In this document: in pieces, positions 10,701 to 31,211 of the stretch
Layout: each line of letters starts with the position of its first letter
Numbering within the stretch: position 1 is the stretch's first letter
Assembly: GCF_964204645.1 (NCBI RefSeq)
Contig: NC_134031.1
Span: forward strand, 16,851,807-16,915,806
Length of the DNA: 64,000 nucleotides
From: Tubulanus polymorphus
Taxonomy: Eukaryota; Animalia; Nemertea
Direction: 5' to 3'
Position numbers and translations under genes: made by a program
Notes under the pieces: model-generated
What the model was told of the DNA's origin: nothing
The model's input: only the letters and a program-made list of their open reading frames with translations
The model's database searches: none

Positions 10701-11359
10701 GACATATTCTGTTGCTATGTTTGAAATCTTGGGCCTGTTCTGAGCTCAGTCGGTTGAAATAAACAGCTAAGTGCATCAGGCTCAAATAAATAAGTATATT
10801 TGATGGGTGCATTTAGAAATTTTAGATTCAGTTAATAGAAATACTTTGTAGAATAGCTTAATTTCGGTAATTCATTCATAGTGCACAGTGACTATAGGGT
10901 GGATACAAGAGGTAAAATTAGAGTGGGCTCGAACCATCGCTGTTAACTTTTAGTTATAGCAATGTCGGTAAGATGGCGCAACCTTCTGGTATAGCAGTCC
11001 TCGATTGCCAGAGGAAGAATCCCTCGCCTGCCATAGTTGTGGCGAGTCAGGTCATAGTGACACCTGTCGAACGCATTTTGAACTATACGGGAATTCCCTC
11101 GTATTTTATTTCCTCGTTGACGTTGAGTTGTTTGAAGACATTTCACTCGCGGGAAAGAAGGATTTTAAACCCCTGAAGCTGTCATGGGGTGCTGTAAGGG
11201 AGGTGATGATACGCAGAAAGATCCAGGTTCGTATTATTTAAATGTACTATAATTGATTTTGTTAAGTTCACACCTGAAACTAAACTGCGTAAGGTCAGTC
11301 TGTTTAACTACCGTTCTCACTCATCAGTGGTTCTGATTCAGAAGAGAAAGCACTGAAAA

Positions 11360-11481
11360 CACAGGGGCTTGTCACAATTTGATAATGAATGGATGATACC
11401 AGTATCCCTATATAAAAAAGATTTTTTATATAGGCATACTGGTATCATCCATTCATTATCAAATTGTGACAAGCCCCTGTG
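11360..11481. mobile_element. Near-perfect foldback MITE (PIF/Harbinger-like)
   Basis: ~59-bp arms with one mismatch: CAG GGGCTTGTCACAA ... TTGTGACAAGCCC CTG. Confidence 0.75.
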
Positions 11482-12288
11482 ACTGTGTCTGTGAAAAGGA
11501 TATTGGGCTTCTTGTATTTTTAACAAAGTTTGGGGACTCACATTTGCGCACCTGACCATGAGCTGTTAAACAATTAATGATGAGTTACCTAGCTAAACCC
11601 TGCCATGGTTTGGTTTAAAAGTAAATGGGTATAGGCCTAAGCCTAACAACTCAAATCACTGTATGAAAAAATGTATAGATACTGGTGTACAGTAGTATAT
11701 TGTCTATTGAAATGAATAAACCTTTTCGACTTATAAAAACCAACTGGCCCTGGCAGATACCGCAACAAAATTTATTCTACTTCAATGTTAGTTGATGGGA
11801 TGAATGATTTTTTAAGGCGATTTTTTCTGAAATTCTGTTGAATGATGTGAAGGAATTCATATAGCCACATTGATTCACCATTCGAAACTATGAGGATAAT
11901 TGTGGCTAATTGTTCGATCTACTGCGCTGGTTTCTATTTATGATGATGGAATATCACACATAATTCTGCGGTGGTATATCGTTACATCAACGGCATTCTA
12001 ACAGCAGCTGCGGGTGCTGCTGCTGCTGAATATGATATTAATCATATCTATGAATAGTCACTCCCTGGAACTTTGTCAGTTGTAATATAAAAACTAAATG
12101 GCAGCCGCAGCGCCGCTAAAAATTAGATTTTTATAGGTATGTAATAAATCACCTCTTGTCTGGCATGGATCAGGGAATTTGGAGATATTGATTTTAATAA
12201 TCAGGGTATTCAAGGTGTCCATATCTAGTGTACGGAATCTGATTATTATGTAATTGATCAACATTTAAGAAAAAAGTATCCTTCTTTC

Positions 12289-12623
12289 CAAGGGCGGATT
12301 TTGGGGTGGACCGGGTGGACTGGTCCACCCCCATTTTAGAATTTGAGTTTGCCCTCCAAAAAGTCTAGAAATACTTTTTACGGCGGAAATTATAAAAAGA
12401 CTAAGAATAAATCCGAATGGGCCCGCTGATAAGGCCAAGAAAAACTCCTGTTTGTCCTAAATTTTCTGTGGGAGAGTCACCAGAACCCCTCTCCCCCATG
12501 TTTTACTTGCAGCCCTCACCTTGCTAAATCAAGGCATTTTCCCTTTCAAATTTTCAAATGAAGTGCCCATTCCTAATTTCAAGGTGCACCCCTTCAAAAA
12601 ATCCTAGAGCCGCGCCGCCCATG
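12289..12623. mobile_element. Degenerate member of the CAGGGGCGGAT TIR family
   Basis: CAAGGGCGGATTTTGGGG ... AATCCTAGAGCCGCGCCGCCCATG. Confidence 0.55.
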
Positions 12624-14932
12624 CTTTCTATTTTCTACAAAAGCAGGAGTTTCTTATTACTAACCGCAGTAGTAGTCGTACTATGATGTGTTTAGAATGC
12701 TGTTATGGGGTGTGGTCCACAAATGTCGTCGTGTGTACGTGATTAGGGGTCATCACCATGGAAAACTTGAATCAGATAAATGTGGGGGAAATACCTGGTT
12801 TACTATCACTAATTGTGTCCTCAGATAAGACCATTGCCAATTAGCCTATAGCCTAGTCTATCTATATCCATTCGCTAAAACGTAATTTTCGAATTTATCG
12901 ATAGTTTTCTCATTATTATTGAACGTTTATCGGATTGAAATATTGCTGCGGCGACACTGCGAACATCTGTTCATATCGAATTCTCATTTCGAGAGTTGAT
13001 TATATAGATATACACACTTATGACCTGCGGAACCATATTTACCATTTAAGCCGCATGTATTTTGAGTAAAGCATCTGTTCGGCTGTTATGACGTATTCTA
13101 TTCAATTAAATCAGACTTCGTCACGGCCGGTGCTTCAATTGGAGGCTTCGTCAAAGGATATACACTCGTTTGCCTCATTCATGGTAAAATTATGGTTTTT
13201 ATTTCTTGATTCGTAATAAATCCGATCATGTTTATCGTATCGAACCTTATTCATAAATTAAGTCGATCAGAATTTTCCCCTATTAAGTCTTGATAAGACC
13301 TTATTTAGAATTTATATTATTGAGTTGGATACTGAACTATATATAGAGCCTTGGCACTGAATATGTACAATACATATATATCATAATATCATATATTGAA
13401 TTTTCCTTTCAATATTCGCATTTTATTAGTTACGAGCCCTTCCATTAATAAAATGGTCTTTCGATATACAGATCAGTTAAGGCACATCTGTAATGGTGGT
13501 TGAACATAATTAATAGGCGGTAGATTGCTTTGTGACACTGTTGTTGTTGATTTTGTCAACATTGATTAGGTTATAGACTTAAGTCTCTGTCAGAGTATTC
13601 TGTTGGGAATCATTTCCCGAAGTTAGCCTATAGCTGTAGACAGTTCGAGGACCAGTTATTTGTAGGTAGGGCTTCTTTAAATTTTATGTGTCAGTAAATG
13701 CGAGGTAAATATTTCATGGAAATGTCTCCTAAAGTACATTTATAAGTTATTTGATGAGTGACATGTTCATGTCCGTTGCAATCTTCATAAAAGTCACTGA
13801 TTACTGCGGATATACTGAACTACAGTAAACCTCGTCTTACTCAGACAAACTGGGACCAGCAAGCTAAGCGGACATCACAAAATGTATTTTATTTTTATGT
13901 CCCGACTTGGGCATGTCTGGAGAGGTTTACTGAACAGTATCATATCGTTTCTCTCAATAGAGAAATCATTTGTGGTCATTTTAGACTCAACAGGTCGTTC
14001 AACTAGTGATAATTGCCTAAAAGACAGGCCTTGGCCCTCGAAGCACAATCAGAATATATGGCGACAGCTTGAGTATGATCAAAAATCAATGCAACAGATT
14101 AAATTAACTGTTCTGAGCATGAACTACGTTCAATAACCATTCCCTGTTTGTTTTCCGGGCCTTTACAGAATAAATTTCCGAGAATGTATTGATGATTTGA
14201 ATAATAACACCAGTCACTTGCCAGTTCAGGCTGGGTGAAAGATTGCTTATCAGGGGCCAGTTGCTCAAAAGTTGGCCGGTGGATAGTTGACATAGTGCCA
14301 ATTAAAAGTTCATCGTTACTATGGTATTTATAAGTGGGCTGTCTTAAATCAATTTTTTAGAAACTGGTCCCTGAACCAGAACTGAAATTTGTACAAAAAT
14401 TCTGTCCATTTGACCATTCATTTATGTATTTTCTCTTTGGATTTCACTTCATTCCAAGCAAGTATGCTGATGGGTTAGTAAGGGACATAAACCAATGAAT
14501 ATGATTATCATTTTGATGTTAAAGAAATTACACGAATAACTTGGAATGCTGTCAATGTTACCTATGTCATCATAGTTACCATATATAGATGATGCCTTTT
14601 TAAAAATAGCGTCGATCAAAGATCTTTTTTCAAAGCGTCCTTCGGTTGAAGGACTATTTGAGACGTAATTATTCACACTCAAATTCGGGTTTCTCTCAAT
14701 GGCGGGTGATTGAAATATTTCCCTATATTCTTGCATTTTAAAAGAGCCCTTCAAACCCTTGAAGAATATTATTGCGCTCGATCTCGGGCCTGCGTAAGTA
14801 TGAACGTGTTTTCATCGAGGTTTAAAACCACAAATTATATCCTCTACACAACAGTTGAATAATGTCGCACCATTGAAAAAAACCGTTTCGAGTTTATAAA
14901 ACGATATCGGCAAAAAAAATTGAGAACGAATT

Positions 14933-17900
14933 ATGGGTGCGACTAAAGATGCCGACGCCAAAGACGACGGGCCAACTGAGGAAACCGGCCTCGTTAAAAA
15001 AGAATACAAGGGTATGTAGAAACGAAGTTTTGAAGTTTTAAATCGAGTTTCGTATGTCGGGTGACGCAAGTTAGACTCCTGCTTCGAGACACTGATTTCC
15101 TGCCTACTTTAACCACCGTTTTCATGAATAAGTTTTAACTATCCGTTGTTGCTGCGTTCTGTATTCTGGAACCCGATCGCATTGAGACTCGAGACCACAG
15201 CACGAAACCCTGCCTCACTAGCCCGAGTGCGCAGCTCCCATGCGCTGCTGAGATGATGTCATCATTAGCCAATCAGATATTCCATTTTATTTTCGCCCAG
15301 GTTTTTCAACTTAAGAGTTTTTCCGTAAAATTTGCCTCAGCGATTACACAATGAGCAATCTGATTGGCGCCGCAAGCAAACCTGTGCATGTACCTGCGCA
15401 CCCGGTCTAATGTGGCAGTGTTTCCTGCCGTGGCTGAGTCTAGTGACGCGATCAGGTTCCTCCTGAGAGAGGATGGGTTTCTGGTAGAACTTTTTCATGA
15501 CCCGTTAGCGGAACGTGGTCCCCACCGTTAGGTGATGGATATCATAACTTGGTTCTTCGTTTCACAGTTGTTTGTTGGTTCACGTTTGGCCCTACGGTTA
15601 ACGGTTGACTCCACTTTCCACGGAGCGGATTGCCTCGGTTTATCGCATTCCCATCGGACGAAATATTCAAATTTTCCTTCTCAAATTCATGTGGTATGAA
15701 ATATGAAAATCCATCTTTACACCATCTAGGCATAATGTATTGGTCCCAAGTGATCCGAGGCAAGCTTCTACTGTATTTGAAAAAACAAATTAAGAAATTC
15801 AAATTTTATGCCAATTCGAACCTAACTGGCAACTGAGGAACATGGGTCCAACTGAATGGGTTTTCTATTGGATTGACTTGTAGTAATACTGCACATTTTT
15901 GGTGGTTGGTTTCAATCGGTTTGACGATAACATCAATAACGTTTGTGTTCGATTTAATGAGAATAGCTTTTGATAGCTGTATTGGTTTAGCAATTAGAAT
16001 TGCTTATACCCGGAAAATAACGTCAACGATGCCTGATAGCACTGATTCATCGATAACAGCAATGAGCGGTTTTGTTTGTGTCAACGCGGAAGGTCGTTTA
16101 ATTCAGAATGGAATGAATGTACACGGTAGTAGTTGTCATGGTGAGATGTACACACCATCAACAAAACCGCGCTCCTACCCATGTACTCGATAAACCTAGA
16201 AAGGCAGCTGTTGACATTGAAGTCGTTTTCGTGATTCGTTTATGAGCATACTTACTTAACCACGGAAATAATTATGATATCTATACGATATATTTATGAT
16301 ATCTATATTGCCTAATTGATATATAAGTTACATATTTCTGGTTCACAGAAGAAGCGGAAAACCCAAAAAGCAATTGCCTCAGAAAAATGGCTTCCTTATT
16401 GATCTTTCATGTCACGTTTTTGATCGAAGTATATCATTTTTTCAAGTAGTAAGATCAGACACGCCTTAATTTCATGATTCAAAATGGTTGCTGACTTTAT
16501 GAGTAGTTCTGTTTATTATAGCAACCCGTGAAATGGTTGTTGATTATTTAGTTCTGTTTCTGTTGTTGACTATTTCTAGTTCTGTTTATGTGAAAGAAAG
16601 ACTTAAGTCTGCAATCTGCTAAACGCAAACATTTTGTAGTGTCTTCGTTTAAAGGGGATTCCTATTTCGCATTCCTGATATCTTCGCTGATATAATCTAG
16701 TCTGAACATAATGTGTTTGTTTTCCTGTTCTAGCGTATTTCCTGAATTGTAATTGCTTTCGTATAGGAGAATATAAAAACGTTCTATGGGTATAATTCAT
16801 TTTCCAAGAATGTAGAAATGGTCTCTATATCGTTTAGTGTTATATCGGTTGACTATATATGATGGTGCCTTTTCCTTCACTTTAGTGGTTATTTGAAATA
16901 CACAGCAACAAGCGACTATTAATGCATGCGCCTTTCATAAACACTATCGCGTCTTGGGTCAATTTTTTATGTGCATGAATTATTTACTATCAAGTTAGTA
17001 GTCAAATGCATATAAACTTATGGGACAAACATTCTGAATCGCTTTTGTTTATGTCCTGTAAGTTTATATGCTACGTTACTTCTGTTTTCTGGTTATCGGA
17101 AACAGCTAAAACGTTGTGGTTTCATTTTAATAAATTACTTTGTATAAAAATTCGAATTGTGGAACTTCTTCGATTAACTACCAAGTAATTTTGGTCTGGT
17201 GCCGGTTTCAATTACCAGTTTGTCAGTTAACCAGCCTACATGTACATGTACATGTAAATAACCATGTTACGCATTTATGTACGCGGCATTGCAATGGCAG
17301 GAATATCGATTAACTTCGGTACTTGTCAATTTTCCAGTTCAAGTCCCATCCATTAGCGGCATTCGCGAAGAAAATGTCGTTGAAGTGTCGATAATTCATT
17401 CAGCGATTAACACGTTGAAAAACCATATGCAAAATAAAACAGTTGTATCATAAAATTATTTTGATCAGAAATTTTTATCCGAAGTGAAAACTGCGAAAAC
17501 TCTTTATTTATGTATGTGCGTATATCTTTCAGGCGAACCTTTCAAGTATGACCCGACGTTCAAAGGGCCGATAAAAAACCGGTAAGGAATGAGTGAGCGA
17601 GCCGAATCAAAAACTAGTAACAACCAAGTGTCGCACCGTACACATGCATGACGAGCGGATTCGAGATTTGTTTAGGGACGCTCGATTTGATAAATGTCGA
17701 TTGATTTTTGGGAATGTTGATAAATCCCACAGCCCGCCGTGTCTTAAGTCAATCATTATGTAAAAATTGGCTGATATGTGTAGGTCTGTATGTTCAAATA
17801 TTTACTCGTTGATAAAATTCGGTGCGGTATTATTAAGCCAACGCTGTGATATTGAAATAAGGCTCGGGGTTTAATCAGCTATAGAGATATTCATTTGTTC

Positions 17901-20900
17901 AATTTCTTATCTGTTGACAAAAAATATAACTGCTTATCGAAAATGTACTAAAAAGATCAACTTTTAGATTCGAATTCTTCGATGAGATGATTGATGACTA
18001 TCCTGTACTTTAAATGAAACATTTAATTTGTCCGTTTTATATTTTGACTCCATGCTTGCGTATTAGTTATCGTATGTCTACAGACCAATATTAATTGATT
18101 AATCAATTTGATTAAAATTTAATTACAGATCATGTACGGATGTTATATGTCTGCTAGTGTTCCTTGCATTTCTCACCGGACTGGCCGCAATTGCTGGCAT
18201 TGGTACTTTATCATTAAAAAAAGCAAATCTATTATGTTTTCATCCTCTTTTTATATGCTTCATTCTCTCAAAGCCTCTCAAAGCAGTGTTATGTTCATCC
18301 TAGTGTACATCCTCCCCTGGCAGGAATTCGAACCTGATGGCATTGAGACTTGCCACCACCGTACGAAACCCTGCCACACTAGCCTCACTATTAGACAATC
18401 AGATATCCTGTTTTATTTTAGCCCGGGTTTTTCCATTTATAGTTTTTCCTTGAAATCTGCCTCAGCGATTATACAACGGGCAATCTGATTGGTACTGCAA
18501 GTTTTTTTGCGGTAAATCTGTGCATATACCTGCGCACCCGGTCTAGTGTGGTCAGAGTTTCGTGTCATGTCGTGGCTGAGTCTAACGATGCCATCAGGTT
18601 CAAATCGTTCCTGGGGACAAATTACCCATTTAACACATTAATACCCATTGAACAGTTTCTGAAAAATGAAAGTCCACTCCACATATGTTCACATTGAACT
18701 CTGTATTTGTCTATAGTCTAGACACAAGTGATGCTTGAGTTCAACATAAAAATCGTATGAAATCGATTTTTTCCATTTCAACATAGGCTGAACATGTCGT
18801 TACATAACATGTATTATATGCCTGTACCGGTACTATGTACGTATATGCTTCAACAGGAGACTCACTAACCTGTCGACTAAACCAGTAGTTACTGCATACT
18901 GATAAACTTTTTTGGGTTGCCAATTTCTCGACGAGCTAACACTGCTTTGAAAACTGCTCTCTGAAAAAAGCCGATCTTATCATCTTTATATCGATGAATA
19001 AATCTCACTTTAGAATACGTCCTCCCAAGGTTCACGGTCGGTTGATCAAAGTTGCATCCATTTTGTCACAGAGTCATTATCCGCTTACTTACGTTAAAAC
19101 TATCGCACCGATTCGAAATTTGCGTCCCACGAGACCAAAACTACATTGCAATGTTGTTTCCGTGATGGACTACACTTGTGATTTATGAATTAGACTCGTT
19201 TCAGTCCACCATCATAAGTTGTAGTTAATGTTCCCTTAGCTCAAATATGTATTACTTGCATGCAATTCCCCTCCCCCAGAATTTTTAGTAGCTGGTTTGC
19301 CGTGTCAGTATTTTGGTGTTTTGTGGTAAATCAACACAATACGTAGAAAGATGTATTTTGTTTAGTTTTTGTGGTGGGAACACATAGTGGGTATCAGAGT
19401 ATTGCACGCATTATTCGACCGGTCAGTACCAGGTTGACACCAGTCGATACCGGTCATTTCCAGTAGACTCCCGATAGTCAAAGCATTATTTATACATCTT
19501 TTCTTTATCCTCTTTTGCTTTTAGATCATGCACAGATATTATTTGCTGCCTTTTATTTTTTGTGTTCATTTTGGGTTTGGTAGCAGTAGCATTCCTCGGT
19601 AAGTTTGGCTGCAATCAGTGACTGGCCTAATGCTGTTGTAGCCACCACCACGACCACCAATTTGAACAACTCCATATTTGGTAATTTGTAGCCACGATCA
19701 CATGAGGGTTTTTACCCGGGCCTACCATTTACACTGGCGCCCAAAGGGTCTGTACCTGTTTGACATGGGCCTCATCTCGCCCGACCCAAAACACCGGCCA
19801 TTTTAACCCCATTCAAATCGTTTCCATGTGATAACGGCTTTCATAAAACATAAAAATAGTAAAGCTTTGCAGAAAACAGTAAGATATTTTCCTTAATTAG
19901 TCGCATGTTAAATGTCGTGGCGTTGAAATAAATTCATCGATTTATCATTTTCAAAAATTGGATGATTAAGAATTCATTGTTTCGCTTTCAGCATTCAGCA
20001 GGGGAGACCCAAAAATGTTACTGTACCCGACTGACTCTGAGGGCAATATTTGTGGTACTGGCAAGTTTACGTGAGTTTCGTACTAAATTTCAGCTTCGAT
20101 ACTGTATAAACCTCTTGCGGTTTCTTCAATGTCTGTTACGGTTTTCTTGAATTTCAGAGATCGGCCGAATTTGTTTTTCTTCGATTTATTGGCTTGTGCC
20201 CGTATGGGTCCGGCGGTCGCGATCAACGGATGTCCTACACCTCAGGTAACGCCGCGATAACACAAGTGTTTTTGACCTGGGTTGTATTTGGTCCATACCA
20301 GGTGTTAAATGAGCCTGTGCCTGTTTAACACAGGGTAAACAACGTCAGACCAGGCCCAGGTCACATTATTCCATATGAACGCTAAGTGGCTTGACTTGCT
20401 TGCCATAGTATCATTTTGATAGTATATTTCTATAACGAGTGTTGAGTGATTTGTACATGAATGCACTCATTGGGCATGGGCATGGCATAACTCGCATCTA
20501 ATCCCGGCTAGTTTAACGCGGGCAAAATCGCCTCCCTAATTTAAATTTCGATTTATTCATCATAAATCCAAAATATAAGATTGTGAATGAAGAAAAACAA
20601 CAATAACAACTAACAGACAAAAAACAAAAAAGATGTGCAATAAAAGAAAAATTATAAAAGGAGAGAGAGAAGTAATACAATGTCTAACATATACATACAA
20701 TATTATTTAAGTGATATTTACAAGCCCATAATATATAAATTTCGCTATGATCGTGGCTTATGGCACGATCATCGATAAACTGCCGAACACCGGGCCATTA
20801 ATTCTGATGTGATTTCTCATTTTCCGTCTTTTCTAGGTGTGCGTGAAATCGTGCCCTACGAATTATTGGACCTTTATACAAGACGAGGTGACAAACAATC

Positions 20901-23900
20901 GAAACAATTTAATCTGTTTGTACGACGTGGATCCGAAATCGGCGCAATATTCGTCGAAGGTAAGCGATTGCTGAATGCAATCATCGGCGAATCAACCGAT
21001 ACAAAATATGAATACGACGGGAAATGCATGGATTTGAAAGAGATTTACCAGATGACAGCGAAATAGAGTATGAAACTCAAGAAGTTATTATGACAATGCT
21101 CTAGGGTTGTTTATCATAAAAATTTGCGTTGTTATTCACACTGTTCTGTTTTTTCTATATTTCATACAGTCTTTGACACAGCTGGTTCAAGATAAATTGT
21201 GCGCTGGATATACTGTTAAAAGTGTACCAAGTACGTAAATCAATATCAATTATTATTCAAAAATTTTTAATTTCGAATTTCAAAAATTCTAGTATCATTT
21301 CGCTTAAAAATATTGTAACTCAACTGTGGAACTCCGGCTATAACCTATGTATCATTCGTGAGTGTTCTCTGTTTCAGTGGTTGGTCGATGTGTGCCGGCG
21401 ATATTTACCACTTTGCTGAACAAAACGCAAAAACTCGTCAGCCAGGTCGGCAACCAAAACTTTACCCTGACCGGTCCTAATAATGAAACTATCACTGGTA
21501 GTGAGCTCGAACAAGGATCAAAGTGAGCATTTCTCGATGAAACAAATATAAGCGTTGTAAGTGTATCAGTTTATAATTTGAGTTTGATGTTCTTTTAGGT
21601 ATCTGGCGATAATGATGAGCGCTATGGATGTAGCTCAGTCAGTGTTAGCTGATCTTGAAGCTTCCTGGTGGATGCTTATAGTGTAGGTTCTAACTCTAAC
21701 GAATTCGACCCTATCTGTCATTATCAGTGTATTAGCTGAATTGATACAGATATTTGATATTCTTCTCATATTCTTTTTTACAGTGGACTCGTCATATCTG
21801 CAATAATTGCTTTAATTTGGATTCTGATTATGAGGTGGATCGCTGGAGTCATGGTTTGGTTGTCGCTTATCTTGTTCATCGCGCTTTTCGCGTTCGGTAA
21901 GTTCATTGCAAACTTTTATATCTATATAAAGTTTTCTTTCGCTGATCCTGGGTGAGTTATTGTTCTTTTCACCAACAGGAACGTATTATGGTTTCAAGGA
22001 ATATGTTCGACTGAAGGACTCTGTCGGTTCGCAGGGAGCCCTCGAGTTTAAATTGAATCTATCGTACTATGCGGCGCGACAAGAAACCTGGTTAGCTATT
22101 GGTTAGTCTTCTGGCTCCAGTTCCACAGTTGTGAGTTACAATTAACTCCGTAATCAAATCTGAACTCACAACTGAGGAACTGGATCCAGTACTTTTAACT
22201 GGATTAGCTTGGATTTGATAATGATTTCGATAACGATCGTTAATTATTTCGCTTTTTCGTTTTTCAGGAATCATCTGTGCTGTGATTTTGGGAATCGTTT
22301 TGTTGATTCTTTTGATTTTACGCAACCGTATTCGAATTGCTATTTCTATTATTAAGGAAACGAGCAAGTGAGTAGAAAAATATCGCACACACATATCATC
22401 TGTAATCTCTCTGAAATACAACAGCTGGTTTTAAAGATTGGTATTACCTTTAACCTGGGGCTAATTCAATTCACTTTCTATTGAGTGAGCCCCTGGGTTA
22501 AAGGTAATACCAGTCTGTAAAACCGGTTCTAGTATAATACCACCAATTCCTGGTCGAAAAATAACTCCAAACCCCTGAAATCAAGTTTTAATGTCCTCTT
22601 TCTATATCCAACTTCAAATAATTATCTCTTACTTGGTTTTCACTTTTTACACATCAGCGGCACATGATGGTCATTATCTGAAATACCTATTTGTATTATG
22701 ATTTTATCCTTTGGTAGGCTTTTTGTACATATTCGCGCATACTTTGTACGAAGTGCTTGACAACCCTATTTTAGTTTACTTGATGTAACACCCTTGAGTA
22801 GTTGCGGAGCTTACAGTCGTTCATTATTTATTTGATATTTCTGTTCAGAGTAATTTCATATCCCTATCCAGACAGGTGAGAGATCCGTATATTCATGAAA
22901 TGTCTAGTTTCTTTCGTTAAAATCTTTTTTGGATGTTTATGCTTTAAAACAGATACCATGTATACATGTCCGACAGAAAGAACATCGTTTGTCCGACCAC
23001 ACTGATAAACTTCTAGGAGTCTCATTTTGAGGCTTTTCCACCATGTTTGTCTTTGTACGATGTATGTGTACATTTCAAATACAACGTGTTCGATCATTTT
23101 CGCATGTTTATTTCTACATGTTATGAATGGTTAGCTTTGATCGATATTATATATGGAAGCATGAATTTTCAACTTAATTCAATGACTAAATTTTCCTAAA
23201 CCACAGAAATCTTACTGGCATAAGATGTTGTTCATGACAGTCAACTTCCTGATAGATTCAAGATGGGAACAGTTTTGTTTCCAACAAAATGATCACTTGT
23301 TTACCCACCTTTAAAAAAATGTTTAAAACAGATGTTGCATACTGCAGAACTATAGAAATATGTAGCCTTTGTTCTTCTGAAATAAATTCAAGTACCGGTA
23401 CACATGAAACTAAACCTTTAGCAATGTTGCTTTCATTGGTGTGTCACCTAGCATGTTGAGAAACAAAATCTGAATTAGAAGCAGCGATTAGATTTAAACA
23501 TATTGCATGTAAATGAAATATTTGGTTTTATGTGGTAAATGTATGAACATATGGTTTTAGAAATAAAAGCAAATTCTCTTGATGAATCCTAGTTTAGAAA
23601 TTAAGTACTTAACATAGGAAGCCATTTACAAACTTTTTCTGTTCTTATTTGTCTATTACGATAATTTCAGAGCTGTTGGTAACATGATGTTCACTTTATT
23701 GTGGCCGTTGTTCCCATTTGTCCTTCAACTCGGAGTTTTTGGCTTGTGGGGAGCGATAACGATATTCTTGGCGTCGTCTGGTAAAGCTCAATCTAAAGCA
23801 AACGTCACGACTACTAATTCATCAGGAAATCCTGTATTCGACTTGATCGATTGTTCCACACTAGTATGTATCGGGTTTAGACACGGATGTCTGATGACTA

Positions 23901-26900
23901 TTTTCCAGTTTGTCGGTAGTCTAAAGAAAATGTGCTTTTACTTACATTTTAGCCAGCAAATTCATCGCAGCTGAAGTTTTGTCATTTTGTGAAATACGGC
24001 GGAAATGAGTATGTTGAAATCTGTTCAATTAAATTTTCTTAAAAAAAACCTACCAGTAACTAACTAATTTGGCTTGACTAATTTTTCCATTTGTAAATGA
24101 TGTTGTGATTCTAGTCCTGACTCAAGACAGTAAAAAATATTTACACATCTCTGCCTGCCAAAAATAATGTGTGGATATATTTAAACAGAATCAGAATAAG
24201 ATTTTGACACATATATGAAAAATGCTATGCCTATGTAACCGGCTGGTTGTTGTATCGGCAGGCTGGCTGGGGAACTAGCATTTACACCAGCGGTACAGGA
24301 TTCCATCCATCAGGAACAACAAGGCATTTACACCTTATATGTACAATCTTTATTGCATCCTGGAATGAGAATGATTATCATAACTTTACATAGTCTTTAT
24401 ATACAGAATCATGAGTATAATGTGAGAACTAGGTGATCAGAATCTTTCAATTTGTCTGATTCTTGATTTCGGAAATCTTTCAGGCTACACCTTACCGTAT
24501 AAGGCAGAGTCTACTAAGTACCCGCATTGATACATGGCCTCAAATCATTCAGTCATGATTATATCGTTATACTTGGTATCGAACTGTATTTTAGGTACAC
24601 GATTTATCTACAAATCTACAATCTGTTCATGTTGTTCTGGTTGATGAATTTCGTCGTCGCATTAGGTCAGATGACTTTAGCCGGAGCATTCGCCTCGTAT
24701 TACTGGGCATTCTCGAAACCAGCCGATATCCCCGCGTTCCCTCTCTCCGCATCATTTTGGAGATGTATTCGGTAGGACGGATAAAATATCACAGATCTAA
24801 AGTACCAGATAATTCTAATGATTCGTTCCACGTTGAAAACTTTTCTTAACCGTTTATAGATACCATCTCGGCTCTATTGCGTTTGGTTCATTGATTATCG
24901 CAATTATTCAATTGATACGTGCAATGCTTGAATACCTTGATCATAAGCTGAAAGGCTCGGAAAATCCAGTCGCAAAGTTTTTCTTGAAGTAAGTGTACAA
25001 TTTTGACATTTTTTTTATCGCAGTCGCGATAAAAGTTCTTTTAAATTAACGTGCCATATTTGATTTTAGGTGTTTGAAATGTTTCTTCTGGTGTCTTGAG
25101 AAGTTCATGAAATTCCTCAATAAGAATGCGTACATCTTGGTAAGTCAAGTTGAACGAAAAAATGAAAAAAATAAAAGTTGGTTGTCAAGAATGAAAAAAA
25201 CCACATTTTATTCACATTTTTCATATGCAATAATCTTCCTACTTCAGATTGCGGTATATGGTAAAAACTTTTGTACGTCAGCAAAGAATGCATTCTTTTT
25301 GATTTTGAGGAATATTGTAAGGTTTGTGTTGCTGACGGTTGTTTCTATAAAGAATGTAATTATGCGATACAAAGTATTTATTTGAGCATTTTGTCCTACA
25401 TTTAATTTTGTGTCAATTTTCAGGGTTGTGGTTATTGACAAAGTGACCGATTTTGTCATATTCATCGCGAAGCTAGTAGTGGTCGGAGCTACAAGTAAGT
25501 TAAACACGAACCTAGAAGTCTGAATTTTTATGATTTAATCCTAAATTCTTAAAGATTATCAACATTGTAAAAATCTTAAGTTTTTCAGTGGTTTTTCTAG
25601 AATCGCACAAACGGCCCTATTCTGTTGTTTTCACACAGTGTCAGCATTCAGAAATGTATATTTTATCGAGCACAAAGTTCACCACTAGTCGTGTTTATAT
25701 TATTTTCTCACGTACAGCTTGTTTGTTTATGCTGTTGCAAGGGACATTAAAAAAATATGAGTTTGTCTCGTCGGTAATTGATAATCTAAAAAATCCTGCG
25801 GGCATTATCGTTGTAAGTAATAGCATTGTTGTCGGCACCTGATCCTCATTTAGACGAGTCTTGTGATGTAGATAATCCCGATTTTATTATACCCAAAAGT
25901 TTTGGAGCATGGTTTGTTGGTTGCATGGTGTGAATAATTGATTAGAATCGACTCTTGCTTCGCAGATAATGCACTCACAAAATTTGCGCATCCGATCTTA
26001 TAGAAAGCAGTATTAGTGGACACAAAATGAATTCTAGAAAATTCAGTGTTGTCATAGATGAGAAATGCTTCGGTTATATGTATGAAAATATATTTATCCT
26101 GCTTATGCTATGTGTGAACAATCCCCCAGAATCTGTGAAAATTATTCAAATTCGCATGCGTTGATTTATCTATGTATTTTGCATGTGTTTTCAGCTGTAG
26201 CTGCGTTTTTCTTCTTCGACGGGCGAATTCCGTTTATCAGTAATTATTCGCCTAACCTACAGTACAACCTAGTCCCAGTTATCGTAAGTACAACCTATGC
26301 TTCGCGCAGAGCCAGTTCCGCACAGTTACGAATACAAATTCCTCCTCAAAGTTGAATAATGAAAATGAACTATCGGTGATTATAACCTCCCCAGTTTTCC
26401 CCATTGCTGTGGAATTGGATCTAGATTGTAAATTGAATTTAAACATTGATGCTTTACGCTTGAAAAGCCACAAGACCAAAACATTCTGTGTGACCTTATT
26501 TCATCCTTCCTTATTTGTTGGTTCTTAATCGGTACCTCAAACTCAACTTGTAGAAAGCTGTGGTTAGTAGTGGGTCAGTGAGCTAATATTTTACTAAATT
26601 TCCTCATGATGTAATAATATCTTGGAATCGTTTAAGCTATTTACATATCATTCTTCCAAGGTAATATGAACCAGTTGGTACTGAGTAGGAAATCATTTTA
26701 GCATTTTAGTGTTCGAATAATATGTTTGGATTTTCTAGGTAATCGCTATTGGATCATACATTATAGCCGCCTGCTTCTTCAGTGTTTATAACATGGGAGT
26801 GGATACTTTATTCTTATGTTTCCGTAAGTACTACGATACTACAGTAGAACCAGCTTAATTTGGCTCATTTGGGAAAAACCAAATTCATCCCGTTTGATAT

Positions 26901-27293
26901 ACGGGATCCAGTTCATAGTTCTGAGTTTAATTTGTCTCTTTGAGTTAGAACATCGAAAATGAACTGATTTCAACTCAAGAGTTAACTCTAACTCACAACT
27001 GTGGAACCGGAACCTGACATAAGATCAACATCCAGTTTAAACCTGTTCAAATTGAGTTGGTTTCACTACATTATTATTTTCATGGAAATTGATTTGAATT
27101 GAAAACAGGAACTTTTATTCGGAGTGACAGTTTAATGGTATGGGTTTTTTCCATAATTTCAGTGGAAGATTTGGAGCGACATGACGGCTCGCCCGAGAAA
27201 CCGTACTACATGTCGAAGGAGCTGATGAGAATTCTCGGCAAGAAAAACAAGAAACCGAAAGCGACTGAAAAAGAGGCGGAGAAAGATGGCTAA
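14933..27293 (+). CDS. SLC44A2: Choline transporter-like protein (CTL2/CTL4 type; co-ortholog of SLC44A2/4/5), multi-exon
   Basis: Phase-consistent GT-AG exons: 14933-15011, 17533-17581, 19525-19598 (or 18129-18202), 19992-20070, 20158-20245, 20837-20959, 21170-21230, 21378-21522, 21599-21682, 21784-21896, 21979-22101, 22268-22367, 23671-23863, 23953-24008, 24595-24771, 24860-24988, 25070-25139, 25248-25321, 25424-25494, 26195-26283 (or 25718-25812), 26739-26823, 27163-27293. Family motifs: [94 protein letters not shown]. The exact vertebrate paralog cannot be assigned. Confidence 0.95.
15168..15460. mobile_element. ~290-bp long-TIR element, copy 1
   Basis: GGAACCCGATCGC...GCGATCAGGTTCC with extended internal symmetry. 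Homologous to 18330-18601. Confidence 0.7.
16029..16140 (+). CDS. Candidate alternative first coding exon of CTL gene (MPDSTDSS...HGSSCHG)
   Basis: Open frame ending CATG|gtgaga, phase 1. A further in-frame ATG lies at 15957. Confidence 0.5.
18129..18202 (+). CDS. CTL alternative (mutually exclusive) TM1 exon A
   Basis: cag|74 nt|gtactt encoding (R)[24 protein letters not shown](A). Same length and phases as its homologue 19525-19598. Confidence 0.85.
18330..18601. mobile_element. ~270-bp long-TIR element, copy 2
   Basis: GAACCTGATGGCATTGAGACT...AGTCTAACGATGCCATCAGGTTC. Confidence 0.7.
22113..22187. mobile_element. Harbinger-like MITE in CTL intron
   Basis: GGCTCCAGTTCCACAGTTGTGAGTT ... 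AACTCACAACTGAGGAACTGGATCC. Confidence 0.65.
22425..22527. mobile_element. Foldback MITE in CTL intron
   Basis: GGTTTTAAAGATTGGTATTACCTTTAACC ... GGTTAAAGGTAATACCAGTCTGTAAAACC inverted arms. Confidence 0.65.
22849..22875 (+). CDS. Candidate 27-nt in-frame microexon of CTL gene
   Basis: tttgatatttctgttcag|AGTAATTTCATATCCCTATCCAGACAG|gtgaga. Phase 2/2, adds VISYPYPDR. Confidence 0.55.
25718..25812 (+). CDS. CTL alternative (mutually exclusive) exon for the late TM/loop segment
   Basis: ttttctcacgtacag|95 nt|gtaagt, open, phase 1 to 0 like 26195-26283. Encodes (T)[31 protein letters not shown]. Confidence 0.7.
26842..27068. mobile_element. Tc1/pogo-like MITE with nested Harbinger-like MITE
   Basis: taCAGTAGAACCAGCTTAATTTG ... 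CAAATTGAGTTGGTTTCACT, interrupted by 26903-27014. Relatives at 13823-13932, ~28911-29020, ~44800-44956. Confidence 0.55.
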
Positions 27294-30204: not shown

Positions 30205-31211
30205 GATTCTTAAATTGAGACAAAAGCAAAAATTGAGACAAATGCAATGGATTATGGAGAAAACAGAAATATTAGCAGATAAAACCAATCTTAGTTCAGA
30301 ATTCTTCGATAAAATGTCAAAATTGTATCAGAAATGTATAGAGAAGTGTTTTAGTTCGTGCCCAGAAGTGTTATAGATAGTGATAGATGTAAATTCTTAG
30401 AAAACCTGTGCAATGAAACTTACCTGCGCGTTCTGTGTCAAGTCTATATCGATGCTGGACGTCGATCAGAAGTTAATCAGGAACTCCGTTTATTATTACT
30501 AGAGTATTTGCTCGCGTGCTGTTTCATCGTTGATAAGATGTTTGATGTCGTTTGACCTCTGCAACAGCGTCTAGAGCCGAGTCGATCCGGATATGAAATC
30601 TCTCATGTCCAATATCTGATCGAACAAAGCAACCGTGTCGAATGGATACACGTCGGTCGTTGAGTCCGTGTTTTCGAGAAGTTAAATGACTTTCTCATTA
30701 CCTAGGCAGCACCGGTGATTTCGTGATTTACTATTATATTTGCCGTGTGTGACGACGAATTAATGCGATTATACGCAGCGAGCGCGTTCTGTTTAAGGAC
30801 CGACCTGCAACTTATTTGTAATTGGATAGAGCTCTACGCCAGATCAATAGAATCAGTCTGGTTCGATTACATTATCTCACAGAAACAGCTTCATGCTATT
30901 TGAAAAGGATCAAAATAAAAAAGCAAAAACTAATATTTTCACATATTGATTCATTTGGATTAACTTTCGGTCGATCATCTGGTCATGGGTGACCAACTAG
31001 ATAGCTGTTGCTTCAGTGGCCGAGTTAGAGATGAGTTGTGCCTAGACACTGCGAATCGTGTCACCTAGCTTTCTACAGAAGAAATTCCGGGGTAGGCGTG
31101 TCGATATGTAACAAGTCGGTCTGTCACCGTCATTGGAAGGTTCGAATCTTATCCCCTTGCTTGAGTGATGCCCCGAGTCGGTTTACCTATCGACATTTTT
31201 CAACTCTCAGA

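What the first reader, a model, noticed from the sequence alone, without database searches (positions are those of the whole stretch)
18129..19598. Tandemly duplicated, mutually exclusive TM1 exons in a choline transporter-like gene
Two 74-nt exons with identical phases encode homologous peptides: [24 protein letters not shown] and [24 protein letters not shown]. They differ at many sites, including synonymous ones (TGT/TGC, ACG/ACA), yet both keep the CTD motif, hydrophobicity and splice sites, which implies selection on both. Including both or neither shifts the frame. I know of no described TM1 swap in SLC44 genes. It could alter substrate preference, trafficking or palmitoylation (CC versus CL).
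Basis: partly seen in the sequence, partly recalled or inferred. Interest (0 to 1): 0.85.

Follow-up and report, generated by a model that had tools for sequence, protein, structure and literature searches.

The report
Swappable first helix, ribbon-worm CTL2
A ribbon worm's single CTL2-type membrane protein gene carries two old, conserved copies of the exon for its first membrane helix and uses one or the other; this known kind of splicing here mainly changes the helix face that probably touches membrane lipids.

Summary
The pair is real. Exons A (18129-18202) and B (19525-19598) are 74-nt, same-phase AG/GT exons encoding TM1 of the only SLC44A2/4/5-like gene found in this genome (Tubulanus polymorphus, a nemertean). 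Either exon gives an open frame; both or neither gives an early stop. Synonymous sites are saturated (pS 0.91 vs pN 0.28, p=5e-6) and A keeps every family-invariant residue, so both were under selection. RefSeq already annotates both (A in X2 and X7). The one RNA run with spliced contigs here shows only B, so use of A is inferred, not seen. TM1 is single-copy in eight loci from seven other species. 'Substrate preference' is unlikely: in human CTL1, TM1 is peripheral, and two 2026 studies found no choline transport. The A/B differences sit on the variable helix face; A is unusually slim, B bulky. A lipid, partner or trafficking effect is the best guess. No docking/selector RNA structure was found. 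The gene has a second swap exon (noted earlier by this scan, s1-516461), which is also duplicated in Lineus, a bryozoan and an annelid. Verdict: new member of a known kind; moderate interest.

The parts
11184..11226 (+). Alternative first coding exon 1a (begins MGCC), coding part
   Evidence: RefSeq X6 and X7 reproduced exactly
14933..15011 (+). Alternative first coding exon 1b (begins MGATK), coding part
   Evidence: RefSeq X1-X5 reproduced exactly
17533..17581 (+). Constitutive 49-nt exon before the pair; ends inside the Arg codon
   Evidence: joint to B
18129..18202 (+). TM1 exon A, 74 nt; donor GTACTT far from consensus, pyrimidine-poor acceptor; likely the minor form
   Evidence: RefSeq X2 XP_074655893.1 and X7 XP_074655899.1; no contig in RNA run X2
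18308..18617 (.). MITE-like repeat of about 300 bp with terminal inverted arms in the A-B intron; many copies in the genome; no shown role
19525..19598 (+). TM1 exon B, 74 nt; consensus donor GTAAGT, strong acceptor; the form seen in RNA
   Evidence: Joints 17581-19525 (depth 45.8) and 19598-19992 (247) in run X2; RefSeq X1, X3-X6
19992..20070 (+). Constitutive exon after the pair (end of TM1, start of the ectodomain)
22849..22875 (+). 27-nt in-frame cassette exon
   Evidence: RefSeq X4 and X5 lack it
25718..25812 (+). Second mutually exclusive pair, copy a (95 nt; end of TM9, loop, start of TM10)
26195..26283 (+). Second mutually exclusive pair, copy b (89 nt)
11184..27293 (+). Whole coding span of the intact SLC44A2/4/5-like (CTL2-like) gene, 718-741 aa by isoform
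   Evidence: PF04515 hits; all seven RefSeq isoforms rebuilt exactly from window exons

Best explanation
An old tandem duplication of the ancestral 74-nt TM1 exon gave a functional mutually exclusive pair. B is the default form (strong splice sites, closer to the family consensus). A is a minor form, probably limited to some tissues or stages. Shown: the exon anatomy, the frameshift if both or neither are used, purifying selection on both, and splicing of B. Inferred: (i) A is spliced in (from RefSeq isoforms and selection). (ii) Exclusion is kept by competition between splice sites, with A repressed by default, and by nonsense-mediated decay of double-inclusion and double-skip messages. (iii) The swap keeps the CTD motif and the packing face (C7, F11, F14, with G17) and changes the lipid-facing side of a peripheral helix: slim in A (Ala, Thr, Ala, Gly), bulky in B (Val, Leu, Val, Phe, plus an extra Cys). 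This would tune sterol or lipid contacts, membrane-domain sorting or partner packing, not the central cavity.
For: Anatomy and frames. pS 0.91 vs pN 0.28, Fisher p=5e-6; A ranks 37 and B 98 of 123 family TM1 peptides on the profile. B joints in RNA contigs. RefSeq X2 and X7 carry A, and Gnomon makes variants when evidence supports them (10.1101/2025.05.27.656353). Splice-site strengths. The exon is helix 46-71 with pLDDT about 97 in the AlphaFold2 model of the A form. A-B differences have a helical moment (permutation p=0.022) about 150 degrees from the conserved face, and track family variability (rho 0.60, p=0.002); side-chain volume ranks 3/123 for A and 101/123 for B. In human CTL1, TM1-TM4 are peripheral and TM1 borders a cholesterol groove.
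Against: No contig lies on exon A in the only spliced RNA run. RefSeq read support for A could not be inspected. The pair is absent from all other species tested, so there is no cross-species dN/dS. Differences on the variable face are also expected from plain structural constraint. The conservation and volume moments alone are not significant (p=0.11 and 0.09). The structural argument is borrowed from CTL1, a distant paralog, partly from a preprint.
Confidence: 0.62

Rival explanations
1. Both exons are used and kept by selection, but they are functionally equivalent. The pair persists because each is the only usable exon in some cell type (splicing subfunctionalisation), not because the helices differ in function.
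For: All A residues occur in other family members, and the differences lie at the most variable positions. Eight other loci manage with one TM1 exon.
Against: A is near the slim extreme of the family and B near the bulky end. B stayed close to mollusc sequences (up to 20/24 identical) while A diverged (at most 16/24).
Confidence: 0.2
2. Exon A was functional for a long time but is now a rarely or never used relic at an early stage of decay.
For: Donor farthest from consensus in the gene and a pyrimidine-poor acceptor; no RNA contig on A; a transposon 106 nt downstream of its donor.
Against: Frame, AG/GT and all invariant residues are intact. Two RefSeq isoforms carry A. Logan contigs drop minor variants (tool note).
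Confidence: 0.1
3. The swap is a lipidation or substrate switch: Cys8 of B is palmitoylated and Leu8 of A is not, or the helices change what the protein carries.
For: L/C at position 8 is one of the two largest differences, lies near the cytosolic end and on the variable face. Human CTL1 is palmitoylated at unstated sites. The gene also has a first-exon choice between MGCC and MGATK.
Against: The lipidated C26 of CTL1 maps to the CTD cysteine common to both exons. The cavity lipid sites are formed by TM5-TM10. No choline transport was detected for CTL proteins. CL is common in the family (17%).
Confidence: 0.08

Closest known systems
Tandem-exon-duplication-derived mutually exclusive exons in membrane proteins (e.g. 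CACNA1C, SCN exon 5a/5b, Drosophila mrp; PMC9741552, PMC8373072)
   Same: Adjacent homologous exons of equal length and phase, one used at a time. The class is enriched in plasma-membrane and ion-transport genes and arises convergently.
   Different: This case replaces almost a whole peripheral TM1 helix of an SLC44 protein and is so far confined to one nemertean. Tissue specificity is not shown.
Homologous alternative exons of vertebrate SLC44A2 and SLC44A5 (PMC4494069)
   Same: Same gene family, also produced by exon duplication.
   Different: Those are 3' exons for the cytoplasmic tail; this pair is internal and encodes TM1.
SLC44A2/4/5 (CTL2/4/5) subfamily, Pfam PF04515; structures of human CTL1 (7WWB, 9QU3) and yeast PNS1 (9F63)
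   Same: Full-length intact protein, 50-59% identical to invertebrate CTL2-like proteins, with the RSCTD motif and ectodomain cysteines.
   Different: One gene with four alternative regions, where Lineus and molluscs have two or more paralogs.
Dscam-type docking site/selector mutually exclusive splicing
   Same: Mutually exclusive choice among duplicated exons.
   Different: No competing RNA duplex above shuffled background was found here, and there are only two exons.

Membership tests
Tandem-duplicated mutually exclusive exons | Adjacent homologous exons, same length and phase, intact splice sites | tested here: met
   74 nt each, 42/74 nt and 13/24 aa identical, AG..GT
Tandem-duplicated mutually exclusive exons | Each alone keeps the frame; never both in one message | tested here: met
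   both or neither gives an early stop; all seven RefSeq isoforms have exactly one; the RNA contig joins up-B-down
Tandem-duplicated mutually exclusive exons | Both exons are spliced into mRNA | tested here: inconclusive
   B seen; A only in RefSeq Gnomon isoforms X2 and X7; contigs drop minor variants
Tandem-duplicated mutually exclusive exons | Purifying selection on both copies | tested here: met
   pS 0.91, pN 0.28, p=5e-6; A keeps S1 C2 T3 D4 C7 F11 F14 G17
Tandem-duplicated mutually exclusive exons | Conservation of the pair across species (typical, not required) | tested here: not met
   Single TM1 in Lineus (2 genes), Liolophura, Patella, Capitella, Paralvinella, Watersipora and Ptychodera; no close relative available
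Tandem-duplicated mutually exclusive exons | Tissue- or stage-specific choice | not testable with these tools
   Only one spliced RNA run, held as contigs
Docking site/selector MXE | Competing intronic RNA duplexes | tested here: not met
   eight region pairs, none robustly above dinucleotide shuffles; the best fell to P=0.215 on retest; conservation could not be tested
Steric (short intron or distant branch point) or U2/U12-incompatible MXE | Branch point too close to the upstream donor, or mixed spliceosome sites | tested here: not met
   A-B intron is 1322 nt; AG-free zone before B is 39 nt; all sites GT-AG, no GTATCCT donor
SLC44A2/4/5 | PF04515 domain, RSCTD-TM1, cysteine-rich ectodomain, best hits to CTL2/4 | tested here: met
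SLC44A2/4/5 | Choline transport | not testable with these tools
   Disputed for the family itself (PMC13160678; 10.64898/2026.10.02.755950)

The most novel reading that the evidence does not exclude
SLC44A2/4/5 genes are a recurrent site of exon-swap evolution (TM1 in Tubulanus; the TM9-TM10 exon in two nemerteans, a bryozoan and an annelid; ectodomain exons in Capitella and Cloeon; the TM9 exon in amphioxus; the tail in vertebrates). In this reading the Tubulanus A/B pair is a regulated switch of the sterol- or lipid-contacting surface that sends the protein to different membrane domains. It would be a natural matched pair for testing the new idea that CTL proteins organise membrane lipids and do not carry choline.
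Probability: 0.2. Interest if true: 0.65.

Novelty: new member of a known kind. Interest (0 to 1): 0.42.

Why it matters
The function of CTL/SLC44 proteins is open again, since recent work finds lipid binding and no choline transport. Two long-conserved versions of one peripheral helix in an otherwise identical protein point to a surface that selection cares about and give a ready matched pair for lipid-binding and trafficking assays. The repeated exon duplications across bilaterians mark other tunable regions. The limit is that this pair is known from one non-model species and belongs to a well-described class of splicing.

Tried and rejected
1. Searching with the 24-aa exon alone: too short for the tool. 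One search was a frame slip, corrected. My own joined gene model was kept in scripts for local comparison only and never sent to a search tool; searches used single exons by reference or proteins returned by the tools.
2. A fragment search with the exon-A N-terminus found no nemertean sequence. That search sees only proteins of 0.55-1.75 times the query length, so the blank says little.
3. The 2015 run X5 laid nothing; X3 and X4 behave as DNA.
4. Docking/selector structures, steric exclusion and U12 incompatibility: not supported.
5. Remnant homology between the flanking introns: none beyond the exon starts, in keeping with an old duplication.
6. Exon A captured from a paralog: rejected. The two other PF04515 genes are distant (30-66% in matched pieces), their TM1 is continuous with the upstream coding sequence, and exon A is single-copy.
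7. A and B matching the two mollusc paralog types: B resembles one type, A matches neither specifically; 24 aa is too short for a tree.
8. My first guess of an exon at 24484-24517 was wrong; the exon is 23953-24008.
9. Loci for Branchiostoma and Gigantopelta could not be fetched.

Full report
Observation. They share 42 of 74 bases and 13 of 24 residues. Joined to the exons at 17533-17581 and 19992-20070, either gives an open frame. Both together stop at codon 87 and neither stops at codon 57, more than 1800 nt before the last junction. By established rules such messages are targets of nonsense-mediated decay; that step is inferred. A profile of 125 family TM1 peptides finds only these two exon-like hits in the window.

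The gene. The exons belong to an intact gene spanning 11184-27293 with PF04515 hits. It is the CTL2-like gene of the nemertean Tubulanus polymorphus. All seven RefSeq isoforms (X1-X7, accessions between XP_074655892.1 and XP_074655899.1) are rebuilt exactly from window exons. It is the only SLC44A2/4/5-type gene found; the two other PF04515 loci on contig 2 are distant. RefSeq has exon A in X2 and X7 and exon B in the other five, each with either first exon. The pair is therefore already annotated, although four literature searches found no paper on it. Gnomon produces alternative variants when evidence supports them (10.1101/2025.05.27.656353), but I could not inspect the read support.

Expression. 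Run X2 is RNA, since its contigs skip GT-AG introns. It shows joints 17581-19525 (depth 45.8) and 19598-19992 (247) and has zero depth over exon A. So B is spliced in and is the main form in that sample. The absence of A is weak evidence. The tool states that contigs drop rare variants, and from my own knowledge of such assemblers, two alternative paths of equal short length are usually collapsed to the deeper one. A has the donor farthest from consensus in the gene (GTACTT) and a pyrimidine-poor acceptor (7 of 15, against 13 of 15 for B), which fits a minor, regulated exon.

Selection. Between A and B, pS is 0.91 (saturated) and pN is 0.28 (Fisher p=5e-6). Differences by codon position are 10, 5 and 17. 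A keeps every near-invariant family residue (S1, C2, T3, D4, C7, F11, F14, G17) and scores within the family range (rank 37 of 123; B 98). Neutral decay of a copy of B reached A's score in at most 1.5e-4 of trials. This shows long constraint on both copies. It cannot exclude a recent loss of use of A.

Distribution. TM1 is single-copy in eight loci from seven species: Lineus (two genes), Liolophura, Patella, Capitella, Paralvinella, Watersipora and Ptychodera. None of the other 23 isoform sets compared swaps a homologous TM1. The intron before TM1 is present in chiton, limpet, Paralvinella and the hemichordate, so a free-standing 74-nt TM1 exon is most simply ancestral. It is fused to the upstream exon in Lineus, Capitella and Watersipora. 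Because such an intron loss could also remove a duplicate, Lineus does not settle whether the pair arose in the nemertean ancestor or later (inference).

How exclusion is kept. The A-B intron is 1322 nt, the AG-free zone before B is 39 nt, and all sites are ordinary GT-AG, so steric exclusion and U12 incompatibility are not supported. Eight region pairs were tested for competing duplexes. None stood robustly above shuffles, and the best fell to P=0.215 on retest. The simplest reading is competition between a strong default exon and a weak regulated one, backed by decay of out-of-frame products.

What the swap changes. In an AlphaFold2 model of the A form, helix 46-71 (pLDDT about 97 over residues 51-70) covers the exon, which spans residues 44-67. 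The A-B differences form a helical stripe (permutation p=0.022) about 150 degrees from the conserved face and follow family variability. A is among the slimmest TM1 helices of the family (rank 3 of 123) and B is bulky (101) and more hydrophobic. In human CTL1, TM1-TM4 are peripheral, TM1 borders a groove holding three cholesterols, and the cavity lipid sites come from TM5-TM10 (10.64898/2026.10.02.755950). The lipid-modified C26 of CTL1 aligns with the CTD cysteine shared by both exons. That preprint and PMC13160678 found no choline transport by CTL proteins. A change of substrate is therefore unlikely; a change in lipid contacts, sorting or partner packing is more likely. The caveats are that drift under structural constraint also piles differences on the variable face, and that CTL1 is a distant paralog. 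The CC/CL difference could alter acylation, but Leu at that position is found in 17% of family members.

Wider pattern. The gene also has two first exons, a 27-nt cassette and a second mutually exclusive pair at 25718-25812 and 26195-26283 (noted by the scan as s1-516461). That late exon occurs in three copies in one Lineus gene, two in Watersipora and two in Paralvinella, where the second lies outside the annotated protein. Capitella has four tandem copies of an ectodomain exon, annotated as consecutive. Amphioxus and Cloeon isoforms swap other internal blocks. Vertebrate SLC44A2 and A5 have homologous tail exons (PMC4494069). The late cluster may be older and more interesting than the TM1 pair.

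Comparison and verdict. Tandem-duplicated mutually exclusive exons are a known class, enriched in membrane and transport proteins and often convergent (PMC9741552). This scan lists other helix swaps in the same genome (s1-503525, s1-535385; not checked here). The pair meets the structural and selection tests for that class; use of A remains inferred. It is a new member of a known kind, with interest 0.42.

Noticed in passing
window 25718-25812 and 26195-26283; L006 32169, 33409, 35238; L012 38837, 40863; L009 28989, 30722-30835: The TM9-TM10 exon is tandemly duplicated in Tubulanus (2), Lineus (3), Watersipora (2) and Paralvinella (2, the second not in the annotated protein): possibly an ancient lophotrochozoan mutually exclusive cluster.
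   Followed up: partly
L008 4006-4865 (Capitella teleta): Four tandem homologous copies of an ectodomain exon, annotated as consecutive exons of a 959-aa protein; probably a misannotated mutually exclusive cluster. Two copies of the penultimate coding stretch also appear (8052 and 8445).
   Followed up: no
window 11184-11226 and 14933-15011: Alternative first exons give MGCC (possible myristoyl plus palmitoyl start) or MGATK; the two Lineus paralogs also show MGCC and MGG/MGA starts.
   Followed up: partly
window 22849-22875: 27-nt in-frame cassette exon in a cytosolic linker before TM5; not present in the Lineus or amphioxus proteins aligned.
   Followed up: partly
window 18308-18617 and about 15169-15459: MITE-like element of about 300 bp with terminal inverted arms; 1690 first-look candidates in the genome, best copies 75-86% identical.
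   Followed up: partly
L007 50847-52188 (Liolophura): A 55-bp tandem array derived from the 3' end of the TM9-TM10 exon follows that exon: the same exon is duplication-prone here too.
   Followed up: no
P0198/P0200, P0197/P0306 (Branchiostoma); P0377/P0376 (Cloeon): Isoforms swap homologous internal blocks (TM9 exon in amphioxus, late ectodomain in mayfly), which suggests further independent exon duplications; genomic DNA not seen.
   Followed up: no
L006 25326-29514 (Lineus): A D-amino acid oxidase family gene lies on the opposite strand inside an intron of the CTL2-like gene.
   Followed up: no
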